Numbered from the stretch's first letter, positions 42,833 through 64,000 are shown. The stretch: DNA of 64,000 bases from Marsupella aquatica (GCA_973895155.1 OZ316898.1:21478122-21542121); one strand, 5' to 3'. Made by a program: numbers and translations. Notes: generated from the sequence alone by a model not told the origin.

Positions 42833-43140
42833 TGCCTTGCATGTATGAAGTAGGCAAAGTGTAGCATGAGTAGGCAAACATGACAAACAATAAAATCTCA
42901 CACAAAATCTGTCAGGGCATTTCCTAACAACTGGTCTGACATCAATAGAGCTCTCATAAGATCCCAACTTCCCACATTGTGCACACTTAGCCTGCTTCTC
43001 TACACAATCAATGCACATTCAGGCTCCCTGGTGTGCAGAGGGGAGGCCCACCCCTGTATATATCTTCTCTGCACAGCGCGTGCAATGAGGCCGGTCTTCA
43101 GGCCATTTCAGGGTATTTAGGGAGCGCGGTGCATGGTCTC
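42833..43140 (-). pseudogene. Truncated copy of the EDM2-like PHD exon
   Basis: Nearly identical to the 60765-61303 copy up to ...HTCKA, then cut by the junction. Confidence 0.85.
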
Positions 43141-43652
43141 CTACATGCAGTGCACGGTCTCGACGTTTCAACATTTGGACTCCCACAACATTATTATTAA
43201 AACCTTTAAACTCCGCTAGTATTGATTAGGGTGACTTACGGGTGGTTGCCATAGGCTCCCATAACATTATTTTTTAAGTGTTCATACACCACTAGCATTC
43301 ATTGTGACTCACTTGTAGTCCCGCACTCCCATAACATTTCCAATAAAAGTCTTTTGCAGCTATAACATTCATGTTGAAACCATTGGACTCCCTTAGCATC
43401 AAAAGTGTCACCATTCAATTAGGTTCGTGAGAAATACAAAGGAAACAAAGCTTGGTCAATGCTTCTAGAATTCATGTACCAGCCTTCAATCTGGTTCTTT
43501 AATGTGCTTGTCACCTTCAAATTCCCTTCTGCATTATTGTTGGGTCGGTATTTTGGTCGGGAAGCATTGGCCTTCAAGAATTCCTGCTGCTGGCCTTCAA
43601 TCTGGTCCTTGACTGTGCTCGCCACCTCCAAATTCCCTTCAATCTGCATCTT

Positions 43653-43935
43653 GAATCTTGCGTCGCTTGGATGGCGTACTGACGTTGTCAATAATTGCAG
43701 CAAGTGATGGATTAGAGTCATTGTCAGATGCAGTCTTCGAGCAAAGGCGTTTCCGAATGGTTACGGTTTTTATGCTTACTGGTGGCAGTGCATCATGAAT
43801 CTTGTGTTGCTTGGATGGCGTACTGACGTTGTCAATAATTGCAGCAAGTGATGGATTTGAGTCGTTCTTGGATGTAGTCTTTGAGCGAAGGCGTTTCCGA
43901 ATGGTTGCGTTTTTGATGCTTACTGGTGGCAGTGG
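43653..43935. repeat. Two 144-bp (48-codon) tandem repeats (also at ~61816-62098)
   Basis: gaatcttg.gt.gcttggatggcgtactgacg at 43653 and 43797. Confidence 0.9.
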
Positions 43936-44389
43936 CGTGGCGTGGTTTTAGGCCGAGTGTGCAGTGATGGAGCTTCCCTTCTGTACAACATCCATGGTTG
44001 CGGTATTCATGCCTTGCTACTCACCTCCATCTGTGTTGCAACTCCATTCAGACACTCCTAGGACCCAAATCGCCTTCACTGTCCAACCCACCATACAAGA
44101 CTCTCATGTAAAGGCTGTGTCTCACATGCGATGCATGGTATGTCTCCAAGTTTCAGCATATGGACTCCCACAACATTTCTGGTTAAAGTGGAGGCTCCCA
44201 TAACATTTCCGGTTAAACCATAGACTCCCATAGCTTTCATGTTGAAACCTTTAAACTCCGTTAGCATCAAATGTGTCACCATTCAATTTTGGACGTGGGA
44301 AATGAGATACAAATTAAAGAAGACCAGGCTTCCTGATTAGAACTAATTCACTCTGTATAGTTGTGATATATTATTTACTCTCTAGACTC

Positions 44390-45430
44390 AATGCTAATCC
44401 ACACCCGGGTCTATGCCCGATCCGCCTCAAACTCTTGGGCCCGTAATGCCAGGTGTGGTAATTCAGCTTCCTCCTGTTGTTGCTGCTCCTCAGCCTACGC
44501 CTGCCAAAAAGCTGCCTTCTGCCTTGCCTTATACTCCACCCCTTGGCACACTTGTAGGACCTCGCGATCCGGCTGTTCCTTTTGATGTGTGGGATGTCGA
44601 GTTTCTGCTTCACGAATGTTGAATTGTGTTACCAGGTTGTCAAAATAATGGGGCCGTGATGCAGAACACGCGGCCGGTAAGGGCCTGTAGGAGAAGCAAA
44701 AACAACACTGACCGCAAATTCTTGCCCACGTAGTCAAAGAGGATAGTAGACACCTCGGAGTCACTAAGCCGTTGGGAAAATCTTGAGTGTGGATTCCACC
44801 AGAGCTGAAATGTGATGATGCTCAATACAGGAGTCTAGCTTAGCCCGAGTAAATTTACCCACCGGCGCCTCAATGAACTTGATAAATTCATAGATCACCG
44901 GGTCGCCCCATTTGATGTAGATAGATTCCAACTGCTTGAAGTCTGGTTGGTTACACGGGTCAAAGTTTGCTTTGTAGTCATTCACTACGGCATGTTTGTC
45001 AAGTGCCTTGAGAGGAGATCTTTGGAGCAGTTGTTGTTGGATGTCTTCCCCCAAGCTGGCGTTGAATTGAACCACAAAGAGAGCATTACTTAGGCAGTTC
45101 GTCGTGGAGTCCCAACTTAATCTCATTCTCCTGGTTGAAAGCTGACAGCCAATCTCTAGCTTGCCAGGAATTGAATTCCGATTCAAAGCCTAGTACCACC
45201 TTATTCCTAAAAATCCGTTGGCTACCCAGCTGTAGAATCTCCATGGGGGATGCAGAAGATTTCCTCATTGTCGGCCGTGGGAATACTAGGTGGGTTAAGA
45301 TTCTTCAAGTGGACAGGTCCATGGGAGGTGGCCTTTGTTGCGTGGCGGTGGATCACATTTGTAGATTTCAATGAGGTCGGTTTAGACTTCCACTGCGAGT
45401 GGGCGCTGGCCATATCGAGACAAATGTTTT
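44390..45430 (-). pseudogene. Degenerate L1-type ORF1 remnant
   Basis: SPLKALDKHAVVNDYKANFDP resembles the 15-kb remnant; FDYVGKNLR is followed by CCFCFSYRPLPAAC (CX2CX4[H>P]X4C) at 44707-44666; frameshifted. Confidence 0.65.
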
Positions 45431-45747
45431 TCATATTTTTTGACAGAGCGTGAAAGCAGCCTTCAAATTAACTTACTGCCACTTCTGTCGCATTATAGTT
45501 CTAGCTCTCCTGCTATCTTCCTTTGTACCCGTCTCTTCTCTCTTCTGGTTGGAATTGCTGCTCGACTTAGCATTTCCTTCATATCCGCGAGCGATGGCGG
45601 GCAATTTGCTCTCTGTTGGACAGAATGCTTGACAGAATTCCACGATCACTTGTTATACATAGTTGATATATTCTTGTGTTCATTTTTCTTGTCCATTTGG
45701 AAATTGCACAAATTAACAAAGTATCCATAAAGGTCTGTCATCGTAGA

Positions 45748-47175
45748 AAGTCAATTTTAAGCACTCCCTCGGAGGTGTAATTGTTCAGCATTTGTAAATA
45801 CCTCGCACTATATATCAGGGCTGTACACATCGAATTAGTTCTACTCAGCCATTTCCCACGTCCAAATTTGAATGGTGACACTTTTGATACTAACGGCGTT
45901 TAAAGGTTTCAACATGAATGCTATTGCTGCAAAAATGTTTAACCGGAAATGTTATGGGAGCCTACGAGCGACGAGCACATTAAGGAACCAGATTGAAGAC
46001 GGGCAATAGGAATTCTAGAAGGCCAATACTTCCCGACCATAATACCATCCCAACCATGGCGCAGAAGGGAAATTGAAGGCGGCAAGCACATTAAGGAACC
46101 AAATTGAAGGCGGACAGGAATTCTAGAAGGCCAATGCTTCCCAACTATAATACCAGCCCAACCATGGCATTGAAGGAATTTGAAGGCGTAGAAAGTGATG
46201 ACGTCAAGTCAATTTTAAGCACTCCCTCGGAGGTATAATTGTTCAGCATTTGTAAATACCTCGCACTATATATCACGACTGTACACATTGAATTAGTTCT
46301 AATCAGCCATTTCCCGCGTCCAAAATTGAATGGTGACACTTTTGATACTAACGGAGTTTAAAGGTTTCAACATGAATGCTATTGCTGCAAAAATGTTTAA
46401 CCGGAAATGTTATGGGAGTCTACGGTTTAACCGGAAATGTTATGGGAGCCTACGAGCGATGAGCACATTAAGGAACCAGATTGAAGACGGGCAATAGGAA
46501 TTCTAGAAGGCCAATGCTTCCCAACTATAATACCAGCCCAACCATGGCGTTGAAGGGAATTTGAAGGTGTAGAAAGTGATGACGTCAAGTCAATTTTAAG
46601 CACTCCCTCGGAGGTGTAATTGTTCAGCATTTGTAAATACCTCGCACTATATATCACAACTGGACACATTGAATTAGTTCTAATCAGCCATTTCCCACGT
46701 CCAAAATTGAATGGTGACACTTTTGATACTAACGTAGTTTAAAGGTTTCGACATGAATGCTATTGCTGCAAAAATGTTTAACCGGAAATGTTATGGGAGT
46801 CGACTACGGTTTAACCAAAAATGTTATGGGAGGTAATCAGCCATTTCCCACCTCCAAAATTGAATGGTGACATTTTTGATACTAACGGAGTTTAAAGGTT
46901 TCAACATGAATGCTATTGCTGCAAAAATGTTTAACCAGAAATGTTATGGGAGCCTACGAGCGACGAGCACATTAAAGAACCATATTGAAGATGGGCAATA
47001 GGAATTCTAGAAGACCAATACTTCCCGACCATAATACCAGCCCAACCATGGCACAGAAGGGAATTTGAAGGTGAAGAGCACATTAAGGAACCAGATTGAA
47101 GGTGTGCAGCAGGAATTCTAGAAAGCCAATCCTTTCCGACTAAAATACCACCCCAACCATAGTGCAGAAGGGAAG
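45748..47175 (+). repeat. Modular tandem repeats, inverted relative to modules at 43150-44305
   Basis: aagtcaattttaagcactccctcggagg at 45748, 46206 and 46587; catttcccacgtccaaa...gttatgggag is the reverse complement of 44160-44305. Confidence 0.9.
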
Positions 47176-49345
47176 GGTCTGTCGGCAATTTGAATTACTT
47201 GTTCCCAGGCTGCTTCCAAGTGCAAGCAAGCGTGGACGTGGGTTCCCACTTTAGTTAGACAAACTGTAACTTTAGTTAGAGAAATTCATTGAACGTGGGA
47301 CGAACAAAAGTATTGTGCTTGCAAAAAGAATAGAGACAGTTTGTGTCTATCCCAACTTCATATTCTCGCTGCCTTTGGCAACAGAGAAGAAGATTTAATT
47401 GCACAATGAATTGGTAATACAGAGCGTACAATGGTTTTGGTGGGGACAGTTGCCAACTCAATAACTTTGAGCTTTTAACTATGTTGTGGCCTACCTAATT
47501 ATCGCTGAAAGTGCTCAGACAATAAATGTTCACCTATTGCCGTAAAGTATAAACATTGTGCACGTTCAGTTCCGCTACTTGAATTTACTAAATCGAATCG
47601 GCAAGTGTTGGATTACACATCACTTCCCAAGTTAAAGCAACTTAAATTAGCTGGAGTGAGGGTCGCCACCTATTGGAATTTGGAACTGGAGTGCTTCTTG
47701 TGCACCACCATCAGCTTTGCCTCGGCTGACTTTTGGTGTAGTCCTCCCATCAAGCGTGCGTAGCCCCTGAGACACGAATTGCAGCTCATGAGCTTCAAAC
47801 GCTCTACAAGCATTACAAGCATTTGTGTAGCAATTCTAATGGTTGTCGTGAGCAATTGAAGGATAGACTTATATTGCAGATAATAATGCCGACAGACCCA
47901 TCCCAATTTCCTCATTCCAATCAGTAGTGTGCTCTGGTTTATGCCACAGCTCTTGTGGGGCCCGATAGAAACTTCCAACCATGGCAACTCAAATGAGCAA
48001 GAAGCAGAAGAGGTATTCATCGATTTGACTAACCGGTGTTGCGACAATGCTCGCTCGAAAGGACTCAAACAATTCCAGTGCCAATTTTCAAGTGGCTTGC
48101 TCAGCCACTCGCTGCGAAGTTGCGCAGCTACCTTCGGTTCTGCTGTTGCATGAAGACACGGAATTGGCCAGAAAATTTGCAAACAGTTATGTGAAGGAGA
48201 AATGATGCAGGTGGGGCAAGTCAATGGCCCGGGCTAAACTCAAAGCATCAATTCAGAGCTTGAAAGGGAACAAAATGGCAGTTGACTAAAAAGTTTTGTT
48301 GTGGTGGGTGTGTTGACCTCGCCACACAACAACTCACAGGACGGTAGGGTGAAACAAGTTATAAAATGTTAAGTTCCAAGATTTTTGGCACTTAACTTTC
48401 TAGTGAAGTACTTGCAAAATGACAGACACTAATTAGAGATCGTTAGTGATTTTAACTATCAGATTTAACTATGAGTGCGAGTTGAGCCGGCAGGAACCCT
48501 GCGCTTGTTTTCTTTTGATTTAACAGGATTAGTTGAAAAGATAACCCACCCTAAGAAAATTAACTAGGCGCAGGGGCGTTCTGGACAGCCCAAATGTCTA
48601 TTTTTACTTAGAATCTCATGTTGAGCGAGTATTTAACCAAAAAGTTAAGTGCAAAGACACATGGAACTTATCTTTTTTCACCCCCGCACTCACATAAATG
48701 TTTGTCATGGCAGAAGAGCAGAGAGCCAGAGCCACGCACTCTTTCAATCCCACTTTGTCTTGGCTTGGGTTTGTTACTTACTATGCTCCATGTTGACGAC
48801 ATTCCCTACTCCTTGTTCCTCCTCGGACCCAATGACATCAGACTTTTAACATGACAGGTTTTTCAGTTAGAACTGGGGATAGGAGAAAAATTTGTCTTTA
48901 ATCAATGCAAATGATCAGAACAGCCACACATTCAAGCACATAATTATATACAAGCCATCCGGATAGTGCACTTGTGATGCTCGTTGAACTCAAACTGCCA
49001 TCGGAAGCTATGGACAAAATGCTTGACAGAATTACACAATCACTTGTTATACATAGTTGATATATTCCTGAATTCATTTTTCCTGTCCACTTGGAAATTG
49101 CACAGATTAACAGAAGTATCCATGAAGGTCTGTCATCGTAGAAAGAGATTTCCAGCAAAAACTTGTAAGAAAATTGCAAGACGTGAGGTGCTCAACAGTT
49201 TTTTGTGTCTTGGCCAGTCTTGGGAGGCCATAGGCATTCGTCTATTTGCAGGACGTTTGTTAGCTTTTTTGGGTTTGCATAGATTGCGGTACGGTGGCTT
49301 ACCTTTGGTTGGCAATTTGAGTTCAACGGGCATCACAAGTGCACT

Positions 49346-50527
49346 GCCACCATGTGCTGGGGTAATGCCAATGCCCATGTGCTTGGATGGGTATGTATGT
49401 TTAAAATTACAGTATTTTGAAGGTTGGGGGGTACGACGGATGGGGTATTCCAAAACGCACAGCCACCATGTGCTGGGGTAATGCAAATGCCCATGTGCTC
49501 GGATGGGTATGTATGTTTCAAATTACAGTATTTTGAAGGTTGGGGGGTACGACGGATGGGGTATTCCAAAACGCACAGCTACCATGTGCTGGGGTAATGC
49601 AAGTGCCAATGTGCTCCAAAGGGTATGTATATATCAAATTACAATATTTTGAAGGTCGGGGGGTACAATGGATGGGGTATTCCAAAACGCACAGCCACCA
49701 TGTGCTGGGGTAATGCAAGTGCCAATGTGCTCCGAAGGGTATCTATATATCAAATTACAGTATTTTGAAGGTTGGGGGGTACGAGGGATGGGGTATTCCA
49801 AAACGCACAACCACCATGTGCTGGGGTAATGCAAGTGCCAATGTGCTCCAAAGGGTATGTATGTTTCAAATTACAGTATTTTGAAGGTTGGGGGGTACGA
49901 CGGATGGGGTATTCCAAAATGCACAGTCACCATGTGCAGGGGTAATGCAAGTGCCAATGTGCTCTGAAGGGTATGTATGTATCAAATTACAGTATTTTGA
50001 AGGTTGAGGTACGAGGGATGGGGTATTCCAAAATGCACAGCCACCATGTGTTGGGGTAATGCAAATGTCAATGTGCACCAAAGGGTATGTATGTATCAAA
50101 TTACAGTATTGAAGGTTGGGGATACCAGGGATGGGGTATTCCAAAATGCACAGCCACCATTTGTTGGGGTAATGCAAGTGCCAATGTGCTCCGAAGGGTA
50201 TGTATTATCAAATTACAATATTTTGAAGGTTGGGGGGTACAAGGGATGGGGTATTCCAAAACGCATAGCCACCATGTGCTGGGGTAATGCAAATGCCCAT
50301 GTGCTTGGATGGGCATGTATGTTTCAAATTACAGTATTTTGAAAGTTGGGTGGTACGAGGGATGGGGTATTCCAAAATGCACAGCCAACATGTGTTGGGA
50401 TAATGCAAAATAATGTCAATGTGCACCGAAGGGTATGTATGTATCAAATTACAGTATTTTGAAGGTTGGGAGGTACGAGGGATGGGGTATTCTATAACGC
50501 ACAGCCACAGTGTGCTCGGGTAATGCA
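49346..50527. repeat. 116-bp satellite, ~10 copies
   Basis: gccaccatgtgctggggtaatgc at 49346, 49462, 49578 ... 50504. Confidence 0.97.
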
Positions 50528-50758
50528 GAAGGACTGTACAACGCCCTTTACCCGAGCACCAACTGTGCACAACTTTGGTGCTTATGGGGTGCTGACAATA
50601 TAGGAGCATTTTAGTTCGCATCTCCGGATTCTAGAAAGGTTGGCAGTGACTTGGACAAGACGCCTCATAACAAAGGGAACGTTTCTTCACAACAAGGAGT
50701 TTAAGTTTAAGTACATGGATTGACAGCATCCAATAGAGCAACAAGCAGCTTTGAGGAA

Positions 50759-53700
50759 ATGGAATCTGTCATGTTTTGAGAGGCTCCTTGCGTGTCAATA
50801 CCCTCCTTCCGTCGAGTAAGCCTCATGAGTTGCTCACGACAATGTGTTGGTGATAGGATTAGGGTTTACTTAATTGGACTACCTTTCATACGACAGAAGC
50901 GAATTTCAAGCACAGCAGATCTTGAAGACCTTGAAGAAAAGCTTGTGCAGGTGACAAAGCGCAATGACGAATACCAAGTTGCTAAACAAGGTTGGAAGGA
51001 GGACCAATCGCGCATGGCAGAATTGAGTGCTGACCTTCAAATGGGCACTGCAGAACGAGACGAGGTCACTAGCGAATTTGAAGAGTTCAAATTGCAGTCA
51101 CAGTCCAGGTTGAAAGACCTTGAAGAAAAGCTTATGCAGGTGACAATGCGCAATGACGAATACCAAGCTGCTGAACAAGATGGAAGAAGGACCAATCGCG
51201 CATGGCAAAATTGAGTGTTAAACTTGAAATGGGCACTGTAGGATGAGATGCTATCGCCAACAAATTTGAAGAGTTCAAATTGCAGTCACAATGCAAGTTG
51301 AAAGACCTTGAAGAAAATTTTGTGCAGGTGACAAAGCGCAATGACGAATACCAAGCTACTGAACAAGGTTGGAAGGAGGACCAATCACGCATGGCAGAAT
51401 TGATTGTTGAACTTCAAATGGGCACTGCAGAACGAGATGCGGTCACCAGCGAATTTGAAGAGTTCAAATTGCAGTCACAATGCAGGTTGAAAAACCTTGA
51501 AGAAAAGCTTGTGTAGGTGACAATGCACAATGACGAATACCAAGCTACTGAGCAAGGTTGGAAGGAGGACCAATCGCGCATGGCAGAATTGAGTGTTGAA
51601 CTTCAAATGGGCACTACAGAATGAGATGCGATCACCAGTGAATTTTAAGAGTTCAAATTGCAGTCACAATGGAGGTTGAAAGACCTTGAAGAAAAGCTTG
51701 TGCTGGTGACAAAGCGCAATGACAATTACCAAGCTGCTGAACAAGGTTGGAAGGAGGACCAATCGCGCATGGCAGAATTGAGTGCTAACCTTGAAAGGTG
51801 TGTTGCAGGACGAGATGCCGCGATCAATGAACTTGAGTTGTTGAAATTGTCATCAGAAAGCAGGTTTGAAGATGTTCAACGGAAGCTTGTAGAGCAGGCA
51901 GTGCGCATGGAATCATGTTTAGCTAGGTGCTGAATGTGCTTTGAAGAATATCCAAATACGCATGGAAGAATTGGAAAGTGAACTTGCAGGGTGCACTAAA
52001 CAACGAGATGATGTGAGCACACAACTTCAGTTGTCCAGATTAGAGTCACAGAGCAGGTTGGAAGACCTTCAACGAGCACTTGTAGAACAGACAAGGCTGA
52101 AGGCGGAATACACAGTTGCTCACAAAGCTTTGAAGGAGAAGGAAATGTGCATGGGGGAACTGAGAAATGAGGTAGCAAAGTGCACTGCCAAACGCAATAC
52201 TCAGCGCACTAACGTGGAGTCTTTGAAATTGGACTTAGAGCGTACAATGGCAGAGCTTGAACAGGTGCATTGTAGATTGGGCGAGAATGTAGACTTGCAA
52301 CAAATAGTTTTGACTCAGAAAGTAGAATTAAAATTCAAGGATGACCAATTGCACATAGCTCTTGCAAAGGTTGAAGAGTTGGAATGTACAGTGAGGAATT
52401 TGAAGAGAAAGCAGGTGTCGAACGCTAAACCAGTTATACCGTTCATGGTGGAACCAAAGAGGCAAGCTCATGGACGTCCATTACTTGGTTCAACCTCCAA
52501 CAATGAAATGACAACAGTGCCATGTAAAAATTGCGTACAGAGGGATGAGACTGCAAGTTGTTCTCTGTCTGTGGTCTCGCAATTGACTCGTATTAATTTG
52601 GAGGACCCCCCAAAAAGGCGACGACTATTGCGGTCGTTTGATAATGAAGGGGATAGCTTGGATCATGTTGACATTGACGCTACCTCCGTGCGTTGTACAA
52701 TTGCAGATTCCTGTTCCAATTCAGATTCAGAGATGGACTTTCCCCGAGTCCGAGTCCAACCTTTTTTGCAAACAGAGGAACGAGTGAGTAAACTAACCAT
52801 GTTGCAACGTCTTGTCCAAATACTCAGTTTGGATGAACAGAGCCGGTTAAGAAGGCTGACTGTTATTCCATGACCATTGCAGGAATACATCGATGATAGG
52901 GACTTCACAGGAGAAGCAAGCCCACTAGCTAGATGGGCTTATGCAAAATGTGACAGTTTACCAACATCAACGGAAAGGTCTATTCTGGATGCTGTCAAGG
53001 GAGAGTGGTGATTCCAAATGTTTTGGGGGCATTTTGGCAGATGACCAGGTAAAACCCTAAAGCTCACATCATTTCCTAATGTTGAGTGGGCTACGCATTG
53101 ACTTCAGGGTCATCATGTGTTTTGTGGTATGAACTTGGAATTTTCTTCCCCATTGCATGAAATGAACTAACTGTATTTGTTGGTAGGGAATGGGGAAGAC
53201 AATTCAACTGATTACACTCTTAGTCACCAATCGACCACCCAAAAGCAAGACCCTTATCATTTGTCCTGGAAGTGTTATGACTCAGTGGAAACGTGAGATT
53301 ACCACTAAAACTACTGCAAGGGCAAATGTAAAAGTGGTAATATTTCACGGGTCGGACAGATGTATGGATCCAAAGCAGTTGACCTTATATGATGTTATAA
53401 TTACCACTTACGGTACTCTCGCCCAACATTCCACTGTGGACCCACCTACACTGAGAAGAAAAGGGAAATTAAGTCAGAAAATTTCTGTGGAGCCAACACC
53501 CAAGAAAATGAAGGATCCATTGCCTCCTTGCCTGGAGCAGGTACAATGGTACAGGGTGATTCTAGACGAGTGTCAGGCAATCTCAACCATAGGAGTGGCA
53601 GAGCATTAGCTGCTTGCAACCTACATGCAAGAAGCAGATGGTGTGTAAGTGGAAATCCTGTGTCAAATTCTACTTGGGAGGCATACAGTTATTTCAAATT

Positions 53701-55440
53701 TCTTGGATACCCCCCTTATTGTGACATAGATAGGTTCAAGATTTTGAGGCAACATATTGCGAAAAGTAGGAAAGCTGGACACGCAATACTACACAACGAG
53801 CTGAGGGCCATTACATTGAGAAGAGATAAGAGTAAGACAACTACAACTACAATGTTCACATGTGTTGGAATTGGACTTTTCCATTATTTGGAATTGGTTG
53901 AATTTCATATGGATTTCTATGTGTTGTATGCTTGTATGCAATCTTACAGTTGGACATATTTTGTTTGCAGGTATCCTGAATCTACCTAAGAAGCATGTAA
54001 GAGTAGCTCATCTCGACTTTTTAGTTGAAGGTGATGCCATAGTGTATAAGAAATTAGAGGCAAGGAGTGCACCGGAAGACTCGGTATGTTCAATGTTTGG
54101 CCCACCCTATGTGGGTGTACTTTGTCATTATTCAATTGTGCACATATACCGTGGTTGCCCTGTTGTTTTGTACAATTACTCAACCGGGTCGATTTGTGGG
54201 CTTCACAAAAGGGAAACAAGAAAGAGACAGCTAAATTGCTGTCGTTGATGCTGAGAATGAGACGCCACTGTGGGCATCGTGACCTTGTCTTTCACAATGA
54301 AAAAGAAGATAGTGTGAATACTCCCAAGATCCAACCTGATGGAGTCCGTTCAGGCGAATTGGTAAACAAGTTGTTGGATGCTCCAGAAGGGGTGACTTGT
54401 AACAAGTGCCAGGTGATTTTTTGCACAGAGTAAATCCTATTCATAAATCCAGTACCCCGTGGGAGTGTTGTTCAACCGGGGGGTGATTGTTGAAACATTT
54501 GACATTGCACACTAACTTTGAAGTCCATTTTTGTAATATTTGCAGGGTGAGCTTTTTGATGACCCCATGATTTCCATCTGTGGTCACTATTACTGTTCCA
54601 GTTCAGCTTGTTATTTTGATCCGCTGGAAGAGGATATAATATGTGGAGCACCAGACTGTAAGCAGCAAATTTCATGGAGTACGGTGTACAGAGTATGTGA
54701 TATATGTACGTCGTCTAGCACTGAATTGGCAGAGGAGGACTTGGAAATTCTTGGTTTTCATACTTCTGGGCCATCACCCAAAATTGATGGTGTCATGTCT
54801 TACTTGAACGAGCTGCGAGAGTCTGGAAGTGACGATAAGACCATTGTGTTTTCTCAATGGACCGGCTTAATTGACTTGTTACAAGGAACTCTTGAAAGTG
54901 CAAACATCCAGTTCACAAGGGTGGACGGGAGCATGAGTTTGGAGAAGCGTGACCGAAATCTGAGAGACTTTGCCAAATCTCGCCAGGTATGCATAAAGCA
55001 CCCCATATAGGTTGTTTTGGTGCATGTTTTTGAGAAATTGTACATCTGTCACTCACTAAGCATTTCACTACACTGGATTGATTCAGATACAAGTCGCCCT
55101 ACTGTCATTAAAGGCTACCAATACGGGATTAAATATCATGGCTGCCAATCATGTACTCTTTACAGATATATGGTGGAATCCAACAGCAGAAGATCAAGCA
55201 GTGGACAGAACTCATCGTGTAGGGCAGACAAAAGAAGTGTTTGTTACACATTTCCTAATGAGGAATACTATTGAGGAGACATTGTGGCATGTACAACAGA
55301 GAAAGAGGACACTGATTGATGAATGTGTACACGGAAGTTTGAGTAGCGGAAAAAAGGATAACGCAATATTGTAGGAAGTATTGAAAGAGGAGCGACTCAG
55401 GTTGTCTAGGCAACAAGCAGTAGGAAGGCCGAGACGATAG
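50759..55440 (+). pseudogene. SNF2-RING-HELICc ATPase (RAD5/RAD16/RIS1 group, CHR27/CHR28/FRG-like) with an N-terminal coiled-coil repeat region
   Basis: Exons ~50759-50815, 50897-52783, 52883-53048, 53187-53831, 53971-54083, 54188-54412, 54546-54986, 55087-55440. Motifs GGILADDQ|GMGKT, TLIICP, DVIITTY, RVILDECQ, split RING (CNKC..CGHYYC..C), KTIVFSQW, WWNPTAEDQAVDRTHRVGQ. Lesions: stops, 4-bp duplication ~52925, frameshift ~53582, AG>GG acceptor at 54186. Confidence 0.93.
50927..52100 (+). repeat. 189-bp (63-aa) coding tandem repeats: five well-conserved and two degenerate
   Basis: gaccttgaagaaaag-like starts at 50927, 51116, 51304, 51493 and 51682; degenerate copies at 51871 and 52064. Confidence 0.95.
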
Positions 55441-57584
55441 AGCATTCACAAAGCTAGGCACATTGCTCGCCATCTAGAGTCTTTTGAGGCAGGCTTTGAG
55501 ACTCTTACAGTTATGACGAGTGATGGAGGCCACTTGAGTTGAGCTAATGACATCCTCTGCCACCATATTGCCCAAGCATTTGCAAAACCTCCAGTTGGTG
55601 GTGTGCAAAGAGGTGCATATGTGCCGTACATGTTTTAACGGACTCTGTAAAATTGTATTTGAAGTAGGCTAAGGCTTACTCCCATTGGATATGAGATGCA
55701 GGTGACGAGAATGCTGATAGTGTATGCACCACACAGGGCCTAAAATAGGATGCATCTATGGGCACATAACAAGTGGGTGAGATATGGCTTTGCATAGCAC
55801 AAGTTCTGACACGAGTATGTGGGCAGAAGAGAGAAAGGAAGTTCAGAAATTGACCATATTGTGATTGCAGCGGTGTATATCCTCCTCTGCATATAATGTC
55901 CAGCTTCCTCTAACAATATGTGGCCTTTTCTTTCACCAGGTTATGTTTGTGATGCTTCATGATGTGCTGGATGTTGGTGTCAGACATCCAGCCAAAGAGT
56001 ATCGTGGTATGGATGCGTCCTTGCAATTGACTTCCCGGTTATTGTCCAAGATTGTGCTCCAAGTGAACAGTAAGCTCTTCGGGCTAGCTGCCTAGTTTTT
56101 GAGCAATATGGCTGGCTGTGGTGGGCCGATTGGATATGTAGATTCAGCCCCGACTGAGGGGAAAAAGCAGTGAAAAGTTGGAAGATGTCATTCCTGAGTT
56201 GCTGAAGAACAAGTTGCTATCATGCACAAAGAAGGAGTCCTTGTGCAACGGAGTAGTATAAGTGGGGATAGTTTATGGGAGGTGACTTGGCATGAGGTCG
56301 AGGGTATAGCACCCAACCTTGAAGTTGAGCTTTTCCCAGAACCCCAACTGGAGCCGGAACAAGAGTCAGCTGTTGTTTCGGACTCCTCCAATGAGACGGT
56401 GGACTGGAGTGAACATCCTGTATGAACTGGTGAAGGGGATACAACTGTTGAACCTGAAAACAACAGTCAAAGAGGAGGAAGCTGAGGTGCATTTGGCAAA
56501 ATTTACCAAAAGCACAATGACAGGCAGGGTACGGTCTCGCCCATTTCATGATTGCAAGGTGAATTGCTGTGGATGGATGCAAAAGTGTGACCTCATTGAT
56601 TGCATATTCAGTACCACTCGGGATGTGTGGTATTCCCATGATAAGCTGGAACTGTTGTCTTCTCTTGTGTGTATGGTGAAATTAATTGGATTTGTCATCA
56701 ATTCATGGTGTAGGTGGTGAATTTTGTGGGTGCAACACTAAAAACTCGCGCTTTGGGTATAATGTGGTCCACAAATATCCCCTGTAGATGGTGAGCAGCT
56801 CAAAGTCTGGTGCTCTTATTACTGTTATAGTTCATTTGCAGATTGTAGGTGATGCAACATATGGTCATTTAAGATGTAGCTGAATATGGTTGCTACCTTG
56901 ACATTGCCCTTGCTTGTAGTGATCGGATGAGGATACATGAGTACAATTAAAACCTACCTCTGACAGGTGCACGGGAGCTGAACGTTGGATCCCTTGGGGA
57001 GTAGAAACCAGCAGGAAGTTTATCACCAGGACTCTTCAGGCTGAGCACATGATGTGATGTTGCTCAGAGAAGTCTTCGTTCAACATTGAAGAACTATTTC
57101 CTTACATGAATAGAAACTTTTGTGTAGTGGATGACGTTTTTGGCTTGAGCAAGAATTCACCATTTTGAATTCAACTGAACTTTTTTTCCCCTCTTCAAAA
57201 AGTGAATTAACATTGTGGCGGATGTTGATTGATATAGAATGTTGATTTCTGTTCAGCCTGCTATTGTAAGGAGGTTGAATGGGCAACCTTCTAGTAGGGG
57301 TGAAGGTTTGTTTGGGAACAAACAGGCACAGCAGGGTAGTATGGTTGCCTAATCTATCTTGTTGTGGGCATTGTATTGCACCTCGCGCTAACCCTTGGTA
57401 CACTCTTAATCTTAATAGGTGTTCATCTGTAAAGGAACAAGCTAGGCCAAGTATTCTGATAAACCCACACAACACTGTTTAAAGAAAAAGAACAAGGCTG
57501 AGTATTTTGAGAAAACCACACACTGTTGACACTGTTTACATGATAAACGGCCATTGTCAATAAGAGATACAAAAGTTGAGGTCA

Positions 57585-57950
57585 TGTAATGCGGTATTAT
57601 GGTTCATATTAGGAAATTGGGCCATATACGTGGATATCATGCACAAGCCAGGGTAATCTAATAATCGAGTAATGTACAACTAAGGTTAATGTTAGGAATA
57701 CGTCCGAACCTCGGGGTAATCCAATCACGAAGCAATGTACTAGACAGGTTAATCTTAGGATATTGTGCCATACACACGGATACAAAAGTTGGGGTAATCT
57801 TATCCATCAATAAATGTACATTAATTAATGTTCAAGATTTGTGCCATACACATGGATACAAAAGCTGGGGTAATCCTATAATTAATTAAAGTTTGAATGA
57901 ATGTATTAAGGAATGTACTAAGCCGGGCTGTAAAAATGTGGGGTTTTACA
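57585..57950. mobile_element. Possible solo-LTR remnant
   Basis: TGTAA...GGGGTTTTACA termini and an internal duplication; no TSD. Confidence 0.35.
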
Positions 57951-59065
57951 TACATGGACACAAGACTATAAACGCGATGACATGATGTAATCATGCAGGT
58001 TAGGTAAAGTAGGAAGACTGTTTGTTACAAAGTCTTCCTAAAGTCTTCGGCCACAAATGAGGTGTTGTACAACACATTTGTTATGTCGTACAACCATCTA
58101 TTTGAGTAGTGTTTTTTATCTAGATGCCAATGTCCAGTGCAAGGGAAAATTGGCAGGTCATGTGGGACCGGGGAAAATTAAATTTTGATTTATGTGAAGT
58201 GTGCCTCACATGTCCCTTCTAGGTTCTGAAAATCTAGGGTTGACGGTAAAAATAAAAATGTATAATGTGAGTATGAAATAGATACGGAGGTGTTGAGGAG
58301 TAAAACTAGATGACACCAGAATGGGGTAGGGGAAGTTTAGGGTCCATTTATATTGAATGTAATGAGAGAATTGTTTACTAGAATAAATGGTACCCCATAT
58401 TCTAATAATGTGTCTATTGGTCGATACCCAGGAAAGAAAATACCGTCCTATCTTCTTTGCACTTCAACCGACGCACAATGCTTGCCTTTCTGGGGAACAA
58501 GGTAGCCAAAATAAATTCACCGAAGAGAATAGATACGTTCAAAACTCCCGACTTTAATTTACAAATACTACAAAAAAATATTTGACTCTTACCTGAAGTT
58601 TTCCTATCGTCTAAAATCTTAAAGTTTCCCTTTCTTGAAGCTCAAATTGTTTTTCCTTCCCTGCCCTCCCTCAAGTTTTTTTCCCTAGCGCCTGAAGTTG
58701 GAGTTTTTTTTCCTTCCCCCCTGAAGGTGAAGTTTTTTTTTCTTCCTGGAAAAAGCTGAATTTTTTTCGCTTGCTTTGGTTTTTGCTATTTTTCTTCTCT
58801 CCCACTTTCACATTATGTAGGTTTACATCATGTGTGAAAAAAACTAGGATACAACGTATGGATTTGATGAAAAAAATCACCCCTGGCTTAGGGAACTAAT
58901 ATAGAGCAGGTAAATTTAGGCATGTACTTCGCCCAGTATTTGTCCATGCAATACCCAAAATGTTGGTGTAGTGAGGTTTAGGGTCTTTTCAGTACGTTCG
59001 GAGTCCTTCTGCCGGCGCGGGGCGCCTTCATGGGGTTCCCTGTCCGCTTTGTTGCTTGCTATGAC

Positions 59066-59505
59066 TAATAAAAGTACCCTCATTAATAAGAGTACCCTCA
59101 TGCACAAGACCCAACACAAGGGTACCCTTAGGAGATAAGAGTACCCTCACTGATAAGGGTACCCTCATTATCAAAGTACCATTGTTGATAAGCGTACCCA
59201 GTACTCTTGCTGATATAAGAGTACCCTCATTGATAAGAGTACCCTCATACACAAGGGTACCCTCAGGAGATAAGAGTATCCTCATTGATAAGGGTACCCT
59301 CATTGATCAAAGCACCATTATTGATAAGCGTACCCATTGATAAGAGTACCCTCGTTGATAAGAGTACCCTCAGGAGATAAGAGTACCCTCATTGATCTAA
59401 TTAAGTACCATCGTTGATAAATGTACCACATTGATAAGAGTACCCTCACTGACAAGAGTACCCTCATGCACAAGGGTACCCTCAGGAGATAAGAGTACCC
59501 TCATT
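59066..59505. repeat. Array of ~18-bp units (gataagagtaccctcatt) with a palindromic GGGTACCC/GAGTACCC core
   Basis: Over 20 gtacc cores visible in the array. Confidence 0.93.
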
Positions 59506-60764
59506 CACACGGGGAACAATGAAAATAGAAATAATTGTAACCATGTCCAAAATATGAGATCTTTGATAGCCATTCAAAAATAGTGTCCTTCAAAACCTTG
59601 AGGACTTTAGTTTAAGAACTTTTCTAACAAAAAATTCAAGAATGTTTTCATAGCAAAGAATCCAATAAAGTGTAAACTTCAATTTTATGGTGTCCAATTT
59701 TTTTAGATCTTCCCACACTGTAGTAAACAAATCCACTAAATTTTTTTCTTCTAATTTCAATTCAGTAAAAATTACAATTCCGGTCAAATAGTACACGAAC
59801 CATTTTAGATCTGAGTACCGAAATGCCGTAAGTTGTCATTTTTATCATTAGATTTATGAATAATTCAACATGTAGGTGGGGAGAAAGGGGGAATTTTGAT
59901 GTTGAGGTACTCACCTTCATAAATCTACTATTGATTTGTCCCAAGGAGTGTACAGTTCTTTCCTTGGTCTTGCCTCAATATTTGTACAATGTTGGCATGA
60001 ATGACACTGCACAGAACACTAAAAGGATTTAGTGTCTTGAGGATGACCAAAAACAATGACAAGAAACCTAAAACTGAAACTCATTTCTCCAAGTGCATGT
60101 AGAGCTTCATATCATTGGTAACAATAGTGCTTGAAGCCAACTTACTTTTGAATGAACTGTAAGGCAATATCTTGTGAAAGAGGGCCAATAGCTTCCCAAC
60201 TACTAAAGGAAGTAGATTTTGCACCCACAAAGTCATCCCAATGTCAACCAGATCCCCTTGTGCAATCTGAGAAATGTGGAGTATTCAATAAAAGTTCAAA
60301 GCAAAATGCAATAAAACCATCATAAACTCAATATAATGAAATGATGTGATGTGTTCTGCAAACCCTTCTATTTTTAAAATATCTACTAATTAAAAGGAAA
60401 GGATAATACACTAGAATTTACTTCAAAACTGTTAATCATGTTCTCCAAACAATAAGAATGATAGGGAGGGAAAATGTCAACCTGGCCATACGCCCAAGTT
60501 AGGGTGTGAAGCTTAATTTTCAAGAGTTTATGAAATAATAATAAGTTTATGATAGATTTTATTAATTTTCAAAATGATTGTTGAGTCTGAAGAGATCCTG
60601 GAAAGCTAAGGAAATTTTTTAGAGGCATGTACCCAACCACATGTAAGCACAAGATAACTGTTGTCTAATGTCTTGATGGTTCTTCTGATAAAAAATGAAC
60701 TCTCTACAATTTCCGAACAATACATCCACATCAGGGGCACTATGCCAACCCACTTTGTTCAACA

Positions 60765-61303
60765 TCAAAGCCAAGATATGTGATCTCTGACAGGAATGCG
60801 CAAAGTAGGATCGATGGGATGACAATGACAATAAAAGATCCATCGATCAACACCATGTGCAAAGTGATCATAGATTTCTCTGTCACAAGCATAGCCTTCT
60901 GTCTGACGCTCCTTCAAGCAATGATAATGCCACATTGTGGGACACCTAACACAATGGACTATGTTTGTCCAATACTCATCATCATGCTCACCACATGCCT
61001 TGCATGTATGAAGTGGGCAAAGTGTAGCATGAGTAGGCAAACATGACAAACAATAAAATCTCACACAAAATCTATCAGGGCATTTCCTAACAACTGGTCT
61101 AACATCAATAGAGCTCTCATAAGATCCCAACTTCCCACATTGTGCACACTTAGCCTGCTTCTCTACACAATCAATGCACATTCAGGCTCCCTGGTGTGCA
61201 GAGGGGAGGCCCACCCCTGTATATATCTTCTCTGCACAGCGCGTGCAATGAGGCCGGTCTTCAGGCCATTTCAGGGTATTTAGGGAGCGCGGTGCATGGT
61301 CTC
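60765..61303 (-). pseudogene. EDM2-like atypical PHD-finger cluster exon
   Basis: CxxC..KLGS..S..V..C....C..FY, CPLHTCKAC, CVRCPTMWHYHCL and IFYCHCHPIDPTLRIPVRDHISW match the recalled EDM2 pattern (YC..H.ID..L..PVRDH); in-frame TGA at 61182-61184. Confidence 0.85.
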
Positions 61304-64000
61304 CTACATGCAGTGCACGGTCTCGATGTTTCAACATTTGGACTCCCATAACATTATTATTAAAACCTTTAAACTCCGCTAGTATTGATTAGGGTGACTT
61401 ACGGGTGGTTGCCGTAGGCTCCCATAACATTATTTTTTAAGTGTTCATACACCACTAGCATTCATTGTGACTCACTTGTAGTCCCGCACTCCCATAACAT
61501 TTCCAATAAAAGTCTTTTGCAGCTATAACATTCATGCTGAAACCATTGGACTCCCTTAGCATCAAAAGTGTCACCATTCAATTAGGTTCGTGAGAAATAC
61601 AAAGGAAACAAAGCTTGGTCAATGCTTCTAGAATTCCTGTACCAGCCTTCAATCTGGTTCTTTAATGTGCTTATCACCTTCAAATTCCCTTCTGCATTAT
61701 TGTTGGGTCGGTATTTTGGTCGGGAAGCATTGGCCTTCGAGAATTCCTGCTGCTGGCCTTCAATCTGGTCCTTGACTGTGCTCGCCACCTCCAAATTCCC
61801 TTCAATCTGCATCTTGAATCTTGCGTCGCTTGGATGGCGTACTGACGTTGTCAATAATTGCAGCAAGTGATGGATTAGAGTCATTGTCAGATGCAGTCTT
61901 CGAGCAAAGGCGTTTCCGAATGGTTACGGTTTTTATGCTTACTGGTGGCAGTGCATCGTGAATCTTGTGTTGCTTGGATGGCGTACTGACGTTGTCAATA
62001 ATTGCAGCAAGTGATGGATTTGAGTCGTTGTTGGATGCAGTCTTTGAGCGAAGGCGTTTCCGAATGGTTGCGTTTTTTATGCTTACTGGTGGCAGTGGCG
62101 TGGCGTGGTTTCAGGCCGAGTGTGCAGTGATGGAGCTTCCCTTCTGTACAACATCCACGGTTGCGGTATTCATGCCTTGCTACTCACCTCCATCTGTGTT
62201 GCAACTCCATTCAGACACTCCTAGGACCCAAATCGCCTTCACTGTCCAACCCACCATACAAGACTCTTATGTAAAGGCTGTGTCTCACATGCGATGCATG
62301 GTATGTCTCCAAGTTTCAGCATATGGACTCCCACAACATTTCTGGTTAAAGTGGAGGCTCCCATAACATTTCCGGTTAAACCATAGACTCCCATAGCTTT
62401 CATGTTGAAACCTTTAAACTCCGTTAGCATCAAATGTGTCACCATTCAATTTTGGACGTGGGAAATGAGATACAAATTAAAGAAGACCAGGCTTCCTAAT
62501 TAGAACTAATTCACTCTGTATAGTTGTGATATATTATTTACTCTCTAGACTCAATGCTAATCCACACCCAGGTCTATGCCCGATCCGCCTCAAACTCTTG
62601 GGCCCGTAATGCCAGGTGTGGTAATTCAGCTTCCTCCTGTTGTTGCTGCTCCTCAGCCTACGCCTGCCAAAAAGCTGCCTTCTGCCTTGCCTTATACTCC
62701 ACCCCTTGGCACACTTGTAGGACCTCGCGATCCGGCTGTTCCTTTTGATGTGTGGGATGTCGAGTTTCTGCTTCACGAATGTTGAATTGTGTTACCAGGT
62801 TGTCAAAATAATGGGGCCGTGATGCAGAACACGCGGCCGGTAAGGGCCTGTAGGAGAAGCAAAAACAACACTGACCGCAAATTCTTGCCCACGTAGTCAA
62901 AGAGGATAGTAGACACCTCGGAGTCACTAAGCCGTTGGGAAAATCTTGAGTGTGGATTCCACCAGAGCTGAAATGTGATGATGCTCAATACAGGAGTCTA
63001 GCTTAGCCCGAGTAAATTTACCCACCGGCGCCTCAATGAACTTGATAAATTCATAGATCACCGGGTCGCCCCATTTGATGTAGATAGATTCCAACTGCTT
63101 GAAGTCTGGTTGGTTACACGGGTCAAAGTTTGCTTTGTAGTCATTCACTACGGCATGTTTGTCAAGTGCCTTGAGAGGAGATCTTTGGAGCAGTTGTTGT
63201 TGGATGTCTTCCCCCAAGCTGGCGTTGAATTGAACCACAAAGAGAGCATTACTTAGGCAGTTCGTCGTGGAGTCCCAACTTAATCTCATTCTCCTGGTTG
63301 AAAGTTGACAGCCAATCTCTAGCCTGCCAGGAATTGAATTCCGATTCAAAGCCTAGTACCACCTTATTCCTAAAAATCCGTTGGCTACCCAGCTGTAGAA
63401 TCTCCATGGGGGATGCAGAAGATTTCCTCATTGTCGGCCGTGGGAATACTAGGTGGGTTAAGATTCTTCAGGTGGACAGGTCCACGGGAGGTGGCCTTTG
63501 TTGCGTGGCGGTGGATCACATTTGTAGATTTCAATGAGGTCGGTTTAGACTTCCACTGCGAGTGGGCGCTGGCCATACCGAGACAAAACTTTTTCATATT
63601 TTTTGACAGAGCGTGAAAGCAGCCTTCAAATTAACTTACTGCCACTTTTGTCGCATTATAGTTCTAGCTCTCCTGCTATCTTCCTTTGTACCCGTCTCTT
63701 CTCTCTTCTGGTTGGAATTGCTGCTCGACTTAGCATTTCCTTCATATCCACGAGCGATGGCGGGCAATTTGCTCTCTGTTGGACAGAATGCTTGACAGAA
63801 TTCCACGATCACTTGTTATACATAGTTGATATATTCTTGTGTTCATTTTTCTTGTCCATTTGGAAATTGCACAAATTAACAAAAGTATCCATAAAGGTCT
63901 GTCATCGTAGAAAGTCAATTTTAAGCACTCCCTCGGAGGTGTAATTGTTCAGCATTTGTAAATACCTCGCACTATATATCACGGCTGTACACATCGAATT
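60996..64000 (+). repeat. Segmental duplication, copy 2 (runs off the window end; includes the ORF1 remnant at ~62553-63593)
   Basis: Matches 42833-45836. Confidence 0.98.

What the first reader, a model, noticed from the sequence alone, without database searches (positions are those of the whole stretch)
42833..64000. ~18.16-kb amplified unit co-carrying two silencing-pathway genes (EDM2-type PHD reader and FRG/CHR27-28-type SNF2-RING helicase)
Seen: 42833-45836 recurs at +18163 bp at roughly 99% identity by eye. The PHD exon reads continuously across 60996, so the period looks like a tandem unit whose first copy is left-truncated. The unit holds the two genes convergently, with satellites between them. 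Known: Arabidopsis EDM2 PHD fingers read H3K9me2-type heterochromatin, and FRG1/2 act in RNA-directed DNA methylation. Inference: this is an amplicon or giant mobile element that captured chromatin regulators, possibly as anti-silencing cargo, a decoy or an siRNA source. No transposase is visible and both genes are damaged here.
Basis: partly seen in the sequence, partly recalled or inferred. Interest (0 to 1): 0.8.

Follow-up and report, generated by a model that had tools for sequence, protein, structure and literature searches.

The report
Duplicated DNA block with two dead genes
A 3-kb stretch of plant DNA really is present twice, 18 kb apart, but the two "silencing" genes near it are broken relics and only 3 kb of the proposed 18-kb amplified unit can be seen twice, so this looks like an ordinary young duplication in repeat-rich DNA.

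Summary
The repeat is real. 42830-45836 matches 60993-64000 at 98.97% over 3008 bp, offset 18,163 bp. The 30 substitutions (24 transitions) and 1 indel point to true divergence, not sequencing noise. The window end cuts the second copy, so only about 3 of the claimed 18.16 kb is seen twice.

Both genes are correctly identified and both are dead.
- **PHD gene:** a 671-bp fragment of a small stand-alone triple-PHD (NSD/EDM2-like) gene. Finger 1 is missing, and both copies share an in-frame TGA. Copy 1 is cut mid-exon and abuts a degenerate telomere-repeat tract.
- **SNF2-RING gene:** CHR28/FRG-like (Ris1 subfamily), with plant introns. It has two frameshifts in the ATPase core, and four stops plus two frameshifts in its 63-aa repeat rod.

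No transposase, RT or integrase domain, no CACTA ends and no LTR logic were found.

Best reading: a young direct segmental duplication, possibly tandem, in a decayed, subtelomere-like repeat patchwork. I see no functional cargo and no giant mobile element.

This scan has already noted both gene families elsewhere in this genome: a CACTA-borne PHD gene and "TE-borne" SNF2-RING genes. I did not check those notes. Whether the SNF2 relic recurs after 64000 cannot be told from this window.

The parts
42830..45836 (.). Repeat copy 1 (left copy). It starts inside the PHD relic and runs into the first unit of the ~380-bp satellite.
   Evidence: 98.97% over 3008 bp with 60993-64000; 30 substitutions, 1 indel.
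60993..64000 (.). Repeat copy 2 (right copy), cut by the window end, so its true length is unknown.
   Evidence: The last 89 bp already match satellite units at 46206-46294 and 46587-46675.
60566..61236 (-). PHD-gene relic, copy 2. It covers codons 71-226 of a 226-codon triple-PHD gene (fingers 2 and 3 only) plus about 200 nt of 3' flank. There is an in-frame TGA at 61182-61184, and the first finger is absent.
   Evidence: PHD_NSD, PHDvar_NSD. (80% and 74% identity to P0001 and P0002; DNA homology to L001 runs 61236-60566). (TGG>TGA). (first-finger HMM finds nothing significant in the window).
42833..43073 (-). PHD-gene relic, copy 1. It covers codons 71-150 only, carries the same TGA at 43019-43021, and is cut mid-exon at 42830-42833.
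50780..52870 (+). Decayed coiled-coil 'rod' exon of the SNF2-RING pseudogene (63-aa / 189-bp repeats). Stops lie at 51244-51246, 51514-51516, 51622-51624 and 51646-51648. Frameshifts lie near 51175 and 51925. No N-terminal domain lies upstream.
   Evidence: 189-bp x 4.6 repeat.
52874..55374 (+). SNF2_N - RING - Helicase_C part of the CHR28/FRG-like pseudogene, with five inferred introns. There is a +4 frameshift at about 52925-52928 and a -1 frameshift at 53583/53584, in the Lys codon after DECQAI.
   Evidence: Pfam SNF2-rel_dom 2e-17 and 3e-12, Helicase_C 3e-10, RING 0.007. (tblastn with CHR28 P0153). (genomic relative L003 keeps one frame across both sites). (RING and linker exons).
45748..47174 (.). 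Satellite of about 380-bp units built from ~110-bp and ~160-bp modules. The same modules occur inverted inside the repeated block, at 43325-43640 and 44165-44304.
49341..50527 (.). 116-bp satellite, 10.2 copies, 89% matches, directly upstream of the rod exon.
55375..60565 (.). Featureless spacer between the two relics. It holds an 18/37-bp microsatellite at 59134-59509, no protein domain, and no repeat shared with the rest of the window.
41860..42829 (.). Left junction of copy 1: a degenerate telomere-repeat tract. Exact (TTTAGGG)3 occurs at 41861-41880 and 42536-42556. C-strand-like CCCTAAA bits lie at 42497-42533 and 42775-42829 and abut the block. A hairpin forms at 42497-42562.
   Evidence: sequence; dG -19.5 kcal/mol, z -3.4.

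Best explanation
This is a young (about 1% diverged) direct segmental duplication in a decayed, gene-poor, subtelomere-like repeat patchwork. It is not a working amplicon or a mobile element. What is demonstrably duplicated is a block of at least 3 kb, essentially non-coding, that begins inside a dead fragment of a small triple-PHD gene and ends in a satellite. Between the copies lie more satellites, a long-dead CHR28/FRG-like SNF2-RING pseudogene and 5 kb of featureless spacer. The simplest history has four steps. (1) Relics of two gene families that are multi-copy in this genome came to lie side by side and decayed. (2) A direct duplication arose by unequal recombination or replication-based repair; I put about 45% on a true tandem event whose unit is 18,163 bp and so includes the SNF2 relic. 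(3) The left copy was broken inside the PHD relic and the end was capped by, or joined to, telomere repeats. (4) Both copies went on accumulating CpG-biased transitions. Shown: the repeat, its divergence spectrum, both gene identities, all lesions, the absence of mobility genes and the telomere-repeat junction. Inferred: the order of events, the mechanism, the subtelomere-like setting and the extent of copy 2 beyond the window.
For: The repeat is real and genuinely diverged: 30 substitutions, Ts:Tv 4:1, 9 of the transitions at CpG, and only 1 indel. The PHD stop (TGG>TGA) and the missing first finger are shared by both copies, so the gene was dead before the duplication. Family dN/dS of 0.22-0.42 shows the relic descends from a once-selected gene. 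The SNF2-RING gene has at least 8 lesions, and two frameshifts are confirmed against CHR28 and against a collinear genomic relative whose frame is continuous. None of 90 further ORFs of 70 aa or more in 42.5-64 kb hits a transposase, RT or integrase family, and 45 ORFs of 100 aa or more in 1-42.8 kb give only a gag-like zinc knuckle and one weak, probably spurious hit (Pertussis_S2S3, E 6e-4). No CACTA terminal pair flanks the block. There are no Rfam or tRNA hits. Copy 1's left junction is a telomere-repeat tract with a head-to-head hairpin. Copy 2's left flank is the native continuation of the PHD exon, so copy 1 is the truncated copy.
Against: Copy 2 cannot be followed past 64000, so its extent, and therefore whether the duplication is tandem or interspersed, is unknown. 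In a simple two-copy tandem duplication the left copy should keep the native junction; here it does not, so an extra truncation event or a longer original array is needed. Unchecked notes from this scan say the PHD gene family rides on CACTA transposons and that SNF2-RING genes elsewhere look TE-borne, which would favour a transposon-fragment origin for the block. The subtelomere-like setting is inferred only from the telomere tracts and from neighbours' notes.
Confidence: 0.55

Rival explanations
1. The two blocks are dispersed copies of one transposon-derived fragment, for example the head of a CACTA element that carries a triple-PHD accessory gene. One copy is truncated. The SNF2 pseudogene and spacer are unrelated DNA that happens to lie between them and do not recur.
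For: The PHD relic is a 671-bp island with sharp homology limits on both sides. Its only relatives are small stand-alone triple-PHD genes, and one is followed by a further ORF with weak BRCT-like (53BP1) similarity. The block contains inverted copies of the adjacent satellite modules, as transposon subterminal regions do. Unchecked notes from this scan report this PHD family as a CACTA accessory gene and place CACTA-plus-PHD findings 32-38 kb past the window end.
Against: No CACTA terminal pair, transposase, BRCT or F-box domain was found anywhere in the window. Only two copies occur in 64 kb, both in direct orientation. The BRCT similarity in L004 is not significant (E 0.4).
Confidence: 0.25
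2. One reading: an amplified 18-kb unit or giant mobile element that carries a chromatin reader and a remodeler together as anti-silencing cargo, decoy or siRNA source.
For: Two chromatin-pathway gene families lie within 6 kb of each other and in phase with an 18,163-bp repeat. Inverted modules could give hairpin RNA. Both families are noted as TE-associated elsewhere in this genome (unchecked). A neighbour's note on a telomeric tract starts exactly 2 x 18,163 bp after the tract at 42536-42556.
Against: Both genes are non-functional here, and the PHD lesions predate the duplication. There are no termini, TSDs or mobility genes. Only 3 kb is seen twice. The neighbours' notes mention no SNF2 gene after the window end and place a different gene where a third unit's SNF2 would lie.
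Confidence: 0.08
3. The duplication is an assembly artefact, such as an uncollapsed haplotype or a false join at the odd low-complexity tract at 42560-42730.
For: The sequence just left of copy 1 is unusual low-complexity DNA (A/G runs and telomere-like bits) of the kind seen at contig ends.
Against: Differences between the copies are almost all substitutions with a biological spectrum (24 transitions, 6 transversions, CpG bias) and only one indel. The copies have different left flanks and lie 18 kb apart rather than adjacent.
Confidence: 0.03
4. The two blocks are the long terminal repeats of a giant non-autonomous LTR retrotransposon whose interior holds the SNF2 pseudogene.
For: Direct repeats of at least 3 kb at 99% identity separated by 15 kb are the classic LTR signature.
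Against: Homology to an intact PHD gene runs straight across the supposed right-LTR start at 60993, so that point is not an element boundary. There is no gag, pol or integrase in the interior.
Confidence: 0.02

Closest known systems
Arabidopsis FRG1/CHR27 and FRG2/CHR28 (Ris1 subfamily SNF2-RING remodelers, needed for DNA methylation at some RdDM loci; PMC5452414)
   Same: Same domain order, SNF2_N - RING - Helicase_C. The named plant best hits of the motif I-II exon are all CHR28, with fungal Ris1-like proteins among them. Conserved blocks are 37-46% identical to Aristolochia CHR28.
   Different: This copy is a pseudogene with at least 8 lesions. It carries a long 63-aa-repeat coiled-coil rod upstream that the CHR28 hits do not align to. 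The RING ligand spacing is altered (C-x4-C where CHR28 has C-x2-C). No close relative exists in 1.84 billion representatives; the best is 65% over 81 aa. Orthology to FRG was not tested by a tree.
EDM2 / NSD-type PHD finger module
   Same: Intact relatives have the NSD-type trio PHD-1st_NSD, PHD_NSD and PHDvar_NSD. The window copy keeps fingers 2 and 3 with all zinc ligands.
   Different: The relatives are small stand-alone proteins of 217-245 aa, with none of EDM2's other domains. The window copy lacks finger 1 and has a stop. The first finger of the relatives aligns best to AIRE PHD1 among solved structures. Descent from EDM2 was not tested here.
Subtelomeric duplicons bounded by degenerate interstitial telomere repeats (as described for yeast and human subtelomeres; from general knowledge)
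   Same: A young duplicated block whose boundary is a degenerate telomere-repeat tract, in satellite-rich DNA with pseudogene content.
   Different: The chromosomal position of the window is not known to me, and only one boundary is visible.
Transposon gene capture and accessory genes
   Same: A gene fragment with sharp homology limits embedded in repeat DNA. Per earlier notes, the gene family is found on CACTA elements.
   Different: No transposon termini, TSDs or transposase are present here, and the fragment is non-functional.

Membership tests
FRG/CHR27-CHR28 (Ris1 subfamily) SNF2-RING helicase | SNF2_N ATPase lobe with motifs I and II, and a Helicase_C lobe | tested here: met
   Pfam SNF2-rel_dom 2.2e-17 and 3.1e-12; Helicase_C 3e-7 and 3.3e-10. 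The start of the domain lies at 52929-53057.
FRG/CHR27-CHR28 (Ris1 subfamily) SNF2-RING helicase | RING finger inserted between the two ATPase lobes | tested here: inconclusive
   The RING is split over two exons (54416-54430 and 54546-54689). The Pfam zf-RING_UBOX hit is only E 0.0074. It aligns to the CHR28 RING, but with C-x4-C where CHR28 has C-x2-C.
FRG/CHR27-CHR28 (Ris1 subfamily) SNF2-RING helicase | Closest relatives are CHR27/28-type proteins rather than Rad5, Rad16 or SHPRH types | tested here: met
   Among the 20 top-ranked clusters whose names were looked up, the plant entries that carry a descriptive name are CHR28 (Aristolochia, Salvia, Lactuca, Araucaria, Nepenthes) or S. pombe C23E6.02-like; most other entries are unnamed or hypothetical, and the fungal ones are taken as Ris1-like by size and rank. 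This is best-hit evidence only; no tree was built.
FRG/CHR27-CHR28 (Ris1 subfamily) SNF2-RING helicase | Intact open reading frame (a working member) | tested here: not met
   Frameshifts at about 52925 and at 53583/4, confirmed against P0153 and L003. Four stops and two frameshifts in the rod.
EDM2-type PHD reader | Three NSD-type PHD fingers in series | tested here: not met
   Relatives P0001, P0154 and P0155 have all three. The window has only fingers 2 and 3. A first-finger HMM finds nothing significant; the best hit is E 0.09, on the opposite strand.
EDM2-type PHD reader | Descent from or orthology to EDM2, and H3K9me2 binding | not tested
Atlas look-alikes are streptophyte PHD_NSD/PHDvar_NSD proteins. 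Binding cannot be tested with these tools.
Tandem amplicon (unit 18,163 bp) | At least two units visible over their whole length | not testable with these tools
   Only 1.17 units lie in the window. 45837-60992 has no second copy in the window. No public source for the flanking DNA was found.
Tandem amplicon (unit 18,163 bp) | Junction logic: native left flank on the first copy, fusion junction on the later copy | tested here: not met
   The reverse is seen. Copy 2 has the native PHD continuation and copy 1 has a telomere-repeat junction. The model survives only with an extra truncation event.
CACTA (En/Spm) transposon | CACTA terminal inverted repeats, TnpD/TnpA transposase genes, 3-bp TSD | tested here: not met
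   No matching CACTA... termini flank the block. No transposase family hits any ORF. Inverted subterminal-like modules exist but are not diagnostic.
LTR retrotransposon (blocks as LTRs) | LTR boundaries are element boundaries; gag-pol or at least PBS/PPT inside | tested here: not met
   PHD homology crosses 60993. There is no gag, pol or integrase in 45.8-61 kb.

The most novel reading that the evidence does not exclude
Both relics are remains of one composite mobile or subtelomeric unit that carried an FRG-type SNF2-RING remodeler and a triple-PHD histone reader together, a self-contained chromatin toolkit. Intact copies would exist elsewhere in this or related liverwort-type genomes, and the 18,163-bp period would be that unit's length.
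Probability: 0.1. Interest if true: 0.6.

Novelty: new member of a known kind. Interest (0 to 1): 0.2.

Why it matters
As it stands this matters little. It is one more young segmental duplication of pseudogene and satellite DNA in a repeat-rich, probably silenced region.

Its value is as context. It adds a decayed locus where relics of two chromatin-gene families lie side by side: a stand-alone triple-PHD reader and an FRG/CHR28-like SNF2-RING remodeler. This scan has repeatedly flagged both families as transposon-associated in this genome.

The locus also shows a duplicon boundary made of head-to-head telomere repeats. If an intact locus pairing the two genes were found, it would bear on whether bryophyte transposons carry whole chromatin toolkits. 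This window alone does not show that.

Tried and rejected
- **LTR-pair reading:** rejected, because PHD homology crosses the supposed LTR start at 60993 and there is no gag or pol.
- **Assembly artefact:** rejected on the substitution spectrum.
- **Interrupted rather than truncated copy 1:** the 3' part of the PHD relic (60566-60992) has no match anywhere in 1-42829.
- **CACTA ends:** CACTA-type termini were compared pairwise and none flank the block.
- **PHD exon 1:** tblastn and a first-finger HMM gave only a non-significant hit (E 0.01 and 0.09) on the opposite strand, in a repeated module at 45593-45643 / 63756-63806. I do not count it.
- **The 141-aa ORF inside the block (62930-63352):** no Pfam hit, no Atlas hit and low recognition, so probably not a gene.
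- **Word search with the RING/Helicase_C exon:** nothing in the allowed length range.
- **Metagenome scan for PHD relatives:** nothing.
- **SRA run identity of the Logan relatives:** not found in the literature.
- **PDB searches with single exons:** added little.
- **Spliced model:** I searched the SNF2 gene exon by exon, by reference.
- **Human sequence:** no contig looked human.


Full report
**Observation.** A self-comparison of the window finds one long repeat. 42830-45836 matches 60993-64000 at 98.97% identity over 3008 aligned bases, an offset of 18,163 bp. The window end cuts the right copy, so its true length is unknown. A base-by-base alignment gives 30 substitutions (24 transitions and 6 transversions, 9 of the transitions at CpG) and a single 1-bp indel. 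That spectrum is biological, not sequencing noise or a collapsed-read artefact. Nothing between 45837 and 60992 has a second copy in the window; only short modules of 70-160 bp are shared. So 3.0 kb of the proposed 18.16-kb unit is seen twice, and the rest is inferred from spacing.

**The PHD gene.** The open frame 60768-61181 on the minus strand (138 codons) hits Pfam PHD_NSD and PHDvar_NSD.
- The word search found only four relatives, all on ~1-2 kb Logan contigs from one block of SRA runs. P0001 (226 aa) and P0002 (220 aa) are 80% and 74% identical to the window frame. P0154 (245 aa) and P0155 (217 aa) are 53% and 39% identical to P0001.
- These are small stand-alone proteins with three NSD-type fingers: PHD-1st_NSD, PHD_NSD and PHDvar_NSD.
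- The window matches only residues 71-226, at 61236 down to 60768. DNA homology to contig L001 continues about 200 nt past the stop, to 60566.
- The Trp codon just before the frame's Met reads TGA, at 61182-61184 in copy 2 and 43019-43021 in copy 1.
- Homology stops abruptly about 20 nt upstream of the Gly-Val-Gly-Leu-Pro motif.
- The first finger is nowhere in the window. tblastn and a purpose-built HMM give only non-significant hits.
- All zinc ligands of fingers 2 and 3 are still present. dN/dS against the intact relatives is 0.22-0.42. The fragment therefore descends from a gene that was under selection and died fairly recently.
- Copy 1 stops at residue ~150, exactly where the repeat begins.
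- Both copies share the stop and the missing finger, so the gene was already dead when the block was duplicated.

**The SNF2-RING gene.** On the plus strand, 52929-55371 holds SNF2-rel_dom, a weak RING and Helicase_C, spread over exon-like frames with plausible introns. I searched it exon by exon, by reference.
- The word search with the RING/Helicase_C exon gave nothing in its length range, so the exhaustive search was used once, with the motif I-II exon.
- No protein among 1.84 billion representatives is close. The best is an 87-aa fragment at 65% over 81 aa, and the rest are 35-50%.
- Among the 20 top-ranked clusters I looked up, the plant entries that carry a descriptive name are all 'helicase-like transcription factor CHR28' or S. 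pombe C23E6.02-like; most other entries are unnamed or hypothetical, and fungal proteins that I take to be Ris1-like are interleaved.
- FRG1/CHR27 and FRG2/CHR28 are Ris1-subfamily remodelers required for methylation at some RdDM loci (PMC5452414).

The gene is dead.
- Against CHR28 (P0153), the run that reads 'EASPPDG' in CHR28 is split between two frames by 4 extra bases at about 52925-52928.
- The Lys codon after DECQAI has lost a base at 53583/53584.
- Genomic relative L003 is 69% identical and collinear over 52865-54071, introns included. It keeps a single frame across both sites.
- The upstream rod of 63-aa (189-bp) repeats, 50780-52870, has stops at 51244, 51514, 51622 and 51646. It also has frameshifts near 51175 and 51925.
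- No further N-terminal domain lies upstream. The 116-bp satellite is there instead.
- The RING has C-x4-C where CHR28 has C-x2-C.

**What is not there.**
- None of 90 further ORFs of 70 aa or more in 42.5-64 kb hits any transposase, reverse transcriptase or integrase family. The only hit is copy 1's PHD stump.
- In 1-42.8 kb, 45 ORFs of 100 aa or more yield only a gag-like zinc knuckle and one weak, probably spurious hit (Pertussis_S2S3, E 6e-4).
- No pair of CACTA-type termini flanks the block.
- There are no Rfam families or tRNAs.
- The 5.2-kb spacer 55375-60565 is featureless apart from a microsatellite.
- The block itself contains modules (43325-43640, 44165-44304) that recur inverted in the adjacent ~380-bp satellite at 45748-47174. 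This is ordinary for repeat DNA and could form hairpin RNA if transcribed.

**The junctions.** The left flank of copy 2 is the native continuation of the PHD exon, so copy 1 is the truncated copy. Left of copy 1 lies a ~970-bp degenerate telomere-repeat tract (41860-42829). Exact (TTTAGGG)3 occurs at 41861-41880 and 42536-42556. C-strand-like CCCTAAA pieces directly abut the block. A hairpin forms between the C-like and G-like runs.

This looks like a broken end capped by telomere repeats and then joined head to head to another telomere-bearing end, or like a telomere-attaching repeat. A simple two-copy tandem duplication would leave the native junction on the left copy. The reverse is seen, so a tandem model needs a later truncation or a once-longer array. 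The LTR reading fails because gene homology crosses 60993.

**Leads from this scan's earlier notes (unchecked).**
- The genome is described as liverwort-like.
- The triple-PHD gene is repeatedly described as a conserved accessory gene of CACTA transposons. CACTA-plus-PHD notes lie 32-38 kb past the window end.
- Several SNF2-RING genes elsewhere are called TE-borne, and a giant-exon FRG-type paralogue with a broken duplicate is noted.
- My own partial check: in L004 the PHD gene is followed by an ORF with weak, non-significant 53BP1-BRCT similarity.
- No note mentions an SNF2 gene after 64000. A different gene is noted where a third unit's SNF2 would lie.
- One coincidence stays unexplained. 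A note on a stem-loop beside a telomeric tract starts 14,883 nt past the window end. That is exactly 2 x 18,163 after the first base following the tract at 42536-42556. By my rough estimate such a match would occur by chance a few percent of the time.

**Verdict.** The repeat and both gene identifications are right. The 'amplified 18-kb unit' is unproven, and the 'cargo, decoy or giant mobile element' reading has no positive support. For these copies it is contradicted at the protein level, because both genes are dead.

The most likely picture is a young direct segmental duplication of pseudogene and satellite DNA in a decayed, subtelomere-like patchwork (confidence 0.55). I put about 45% on the duplication being truly tandem and including the SNF2 relic. 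The main rival is that the blocks are two copies of a transposon-derived fragment, with the SNF2 relic merely lying between them (0.25). The decisive test is a dot plot of the next 18 kb against 45837-60992, which I could not run because no tool reaches beyond the window.

Noticed in passing
window 41860-42829: A ~970-bp degenerate telomere-repeat tract. It holds exact (TTTAGGG)3 at two places, C-strand-like pieces and a hairpin at 42497-42562 (dG -19.5, z -3.4). A 76-bp unit occurs twice (42455-42530 and 42733-42810). Odd A/G low-complexity DNA lies at 42560-42730. It looks like a head-to-head telomere junction or a telomere-attaching repeat.
   Followed up: partly
It starts exactly 2 x 18,163 nt after the base that follows the window's (TTTAGGG)3 tract. 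This is either chance (a few percent) or a sign that the junction recurs two periods on.
   Followed up: no
window 45440-45750, 63603-63914, 49011-49145 (92%), and inverted at 41600-41858 (about 80%): A repeated ~135-310-bp module sits directly before each satellite array and, inverted, directly against the telomere tract. Its + strand frame has a weak, non-significant resemblance to the missing first PHD finger (E 0.01 to 0.09).
   Followed up: partly
window 3107-3317 and 3920-4477: Two arrays of a 35-bp repeat in opposite orientation, about 600 bp apart, with CACTAC motifs. They look like subterminal repeat arrays of DNA-transposon ends.
   Followed up: no
window 7402-9809 (+) and 33343-36672 (+): Two sets of long adjacent open frames (470+345 aa and 645+307+156 aa). 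They have acidic and coiled-coil stretches, no Pfam hit, and no similarity to each other. They are possibly proteins of undescribed mobile elements.
   Followed up: partly
window 26875-27387: A 171-bp x 3 tandem repeat (86%) inside a 373-codon open frame on the - strand (26637-27755). It is a coding-looking repeat of unknown nature.
   Followed up: no
window 21323-21841 (+): An ORF with a CCHC zinc knuckle (Pfam E 4e-5). It is a gag-like retroelement relic and the only mobile-element domain found in the window.
   Followed up: no
P0001 residues 34-98 (Logan contig L001): Among solved structures, the first finger of the intact triple-PHD relatives aligns best to AIRE PHD1 (E 9e-4), which I recall as a reader of unmodified H3K4. 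The family may not read H3K9me2 as assumed for EDM2.
   Followed up: no
L003 (Logan SRR18067484), 323-1495: A related SNF2-RING gene copy from another sample shares the exon-intron layout of window 52865-54071 at 69% DNA identity. Its frame is continuous where the window is frameshifted, yet its called product is only 87 aa, so it may be damaged elsewhere.
   Followed up: partly
window 36892-37071: A 60-bp x 3 tandem repeat at 97% identity just downstream of the long open frames at 33.3-36.7 kb.
   Followed up: no
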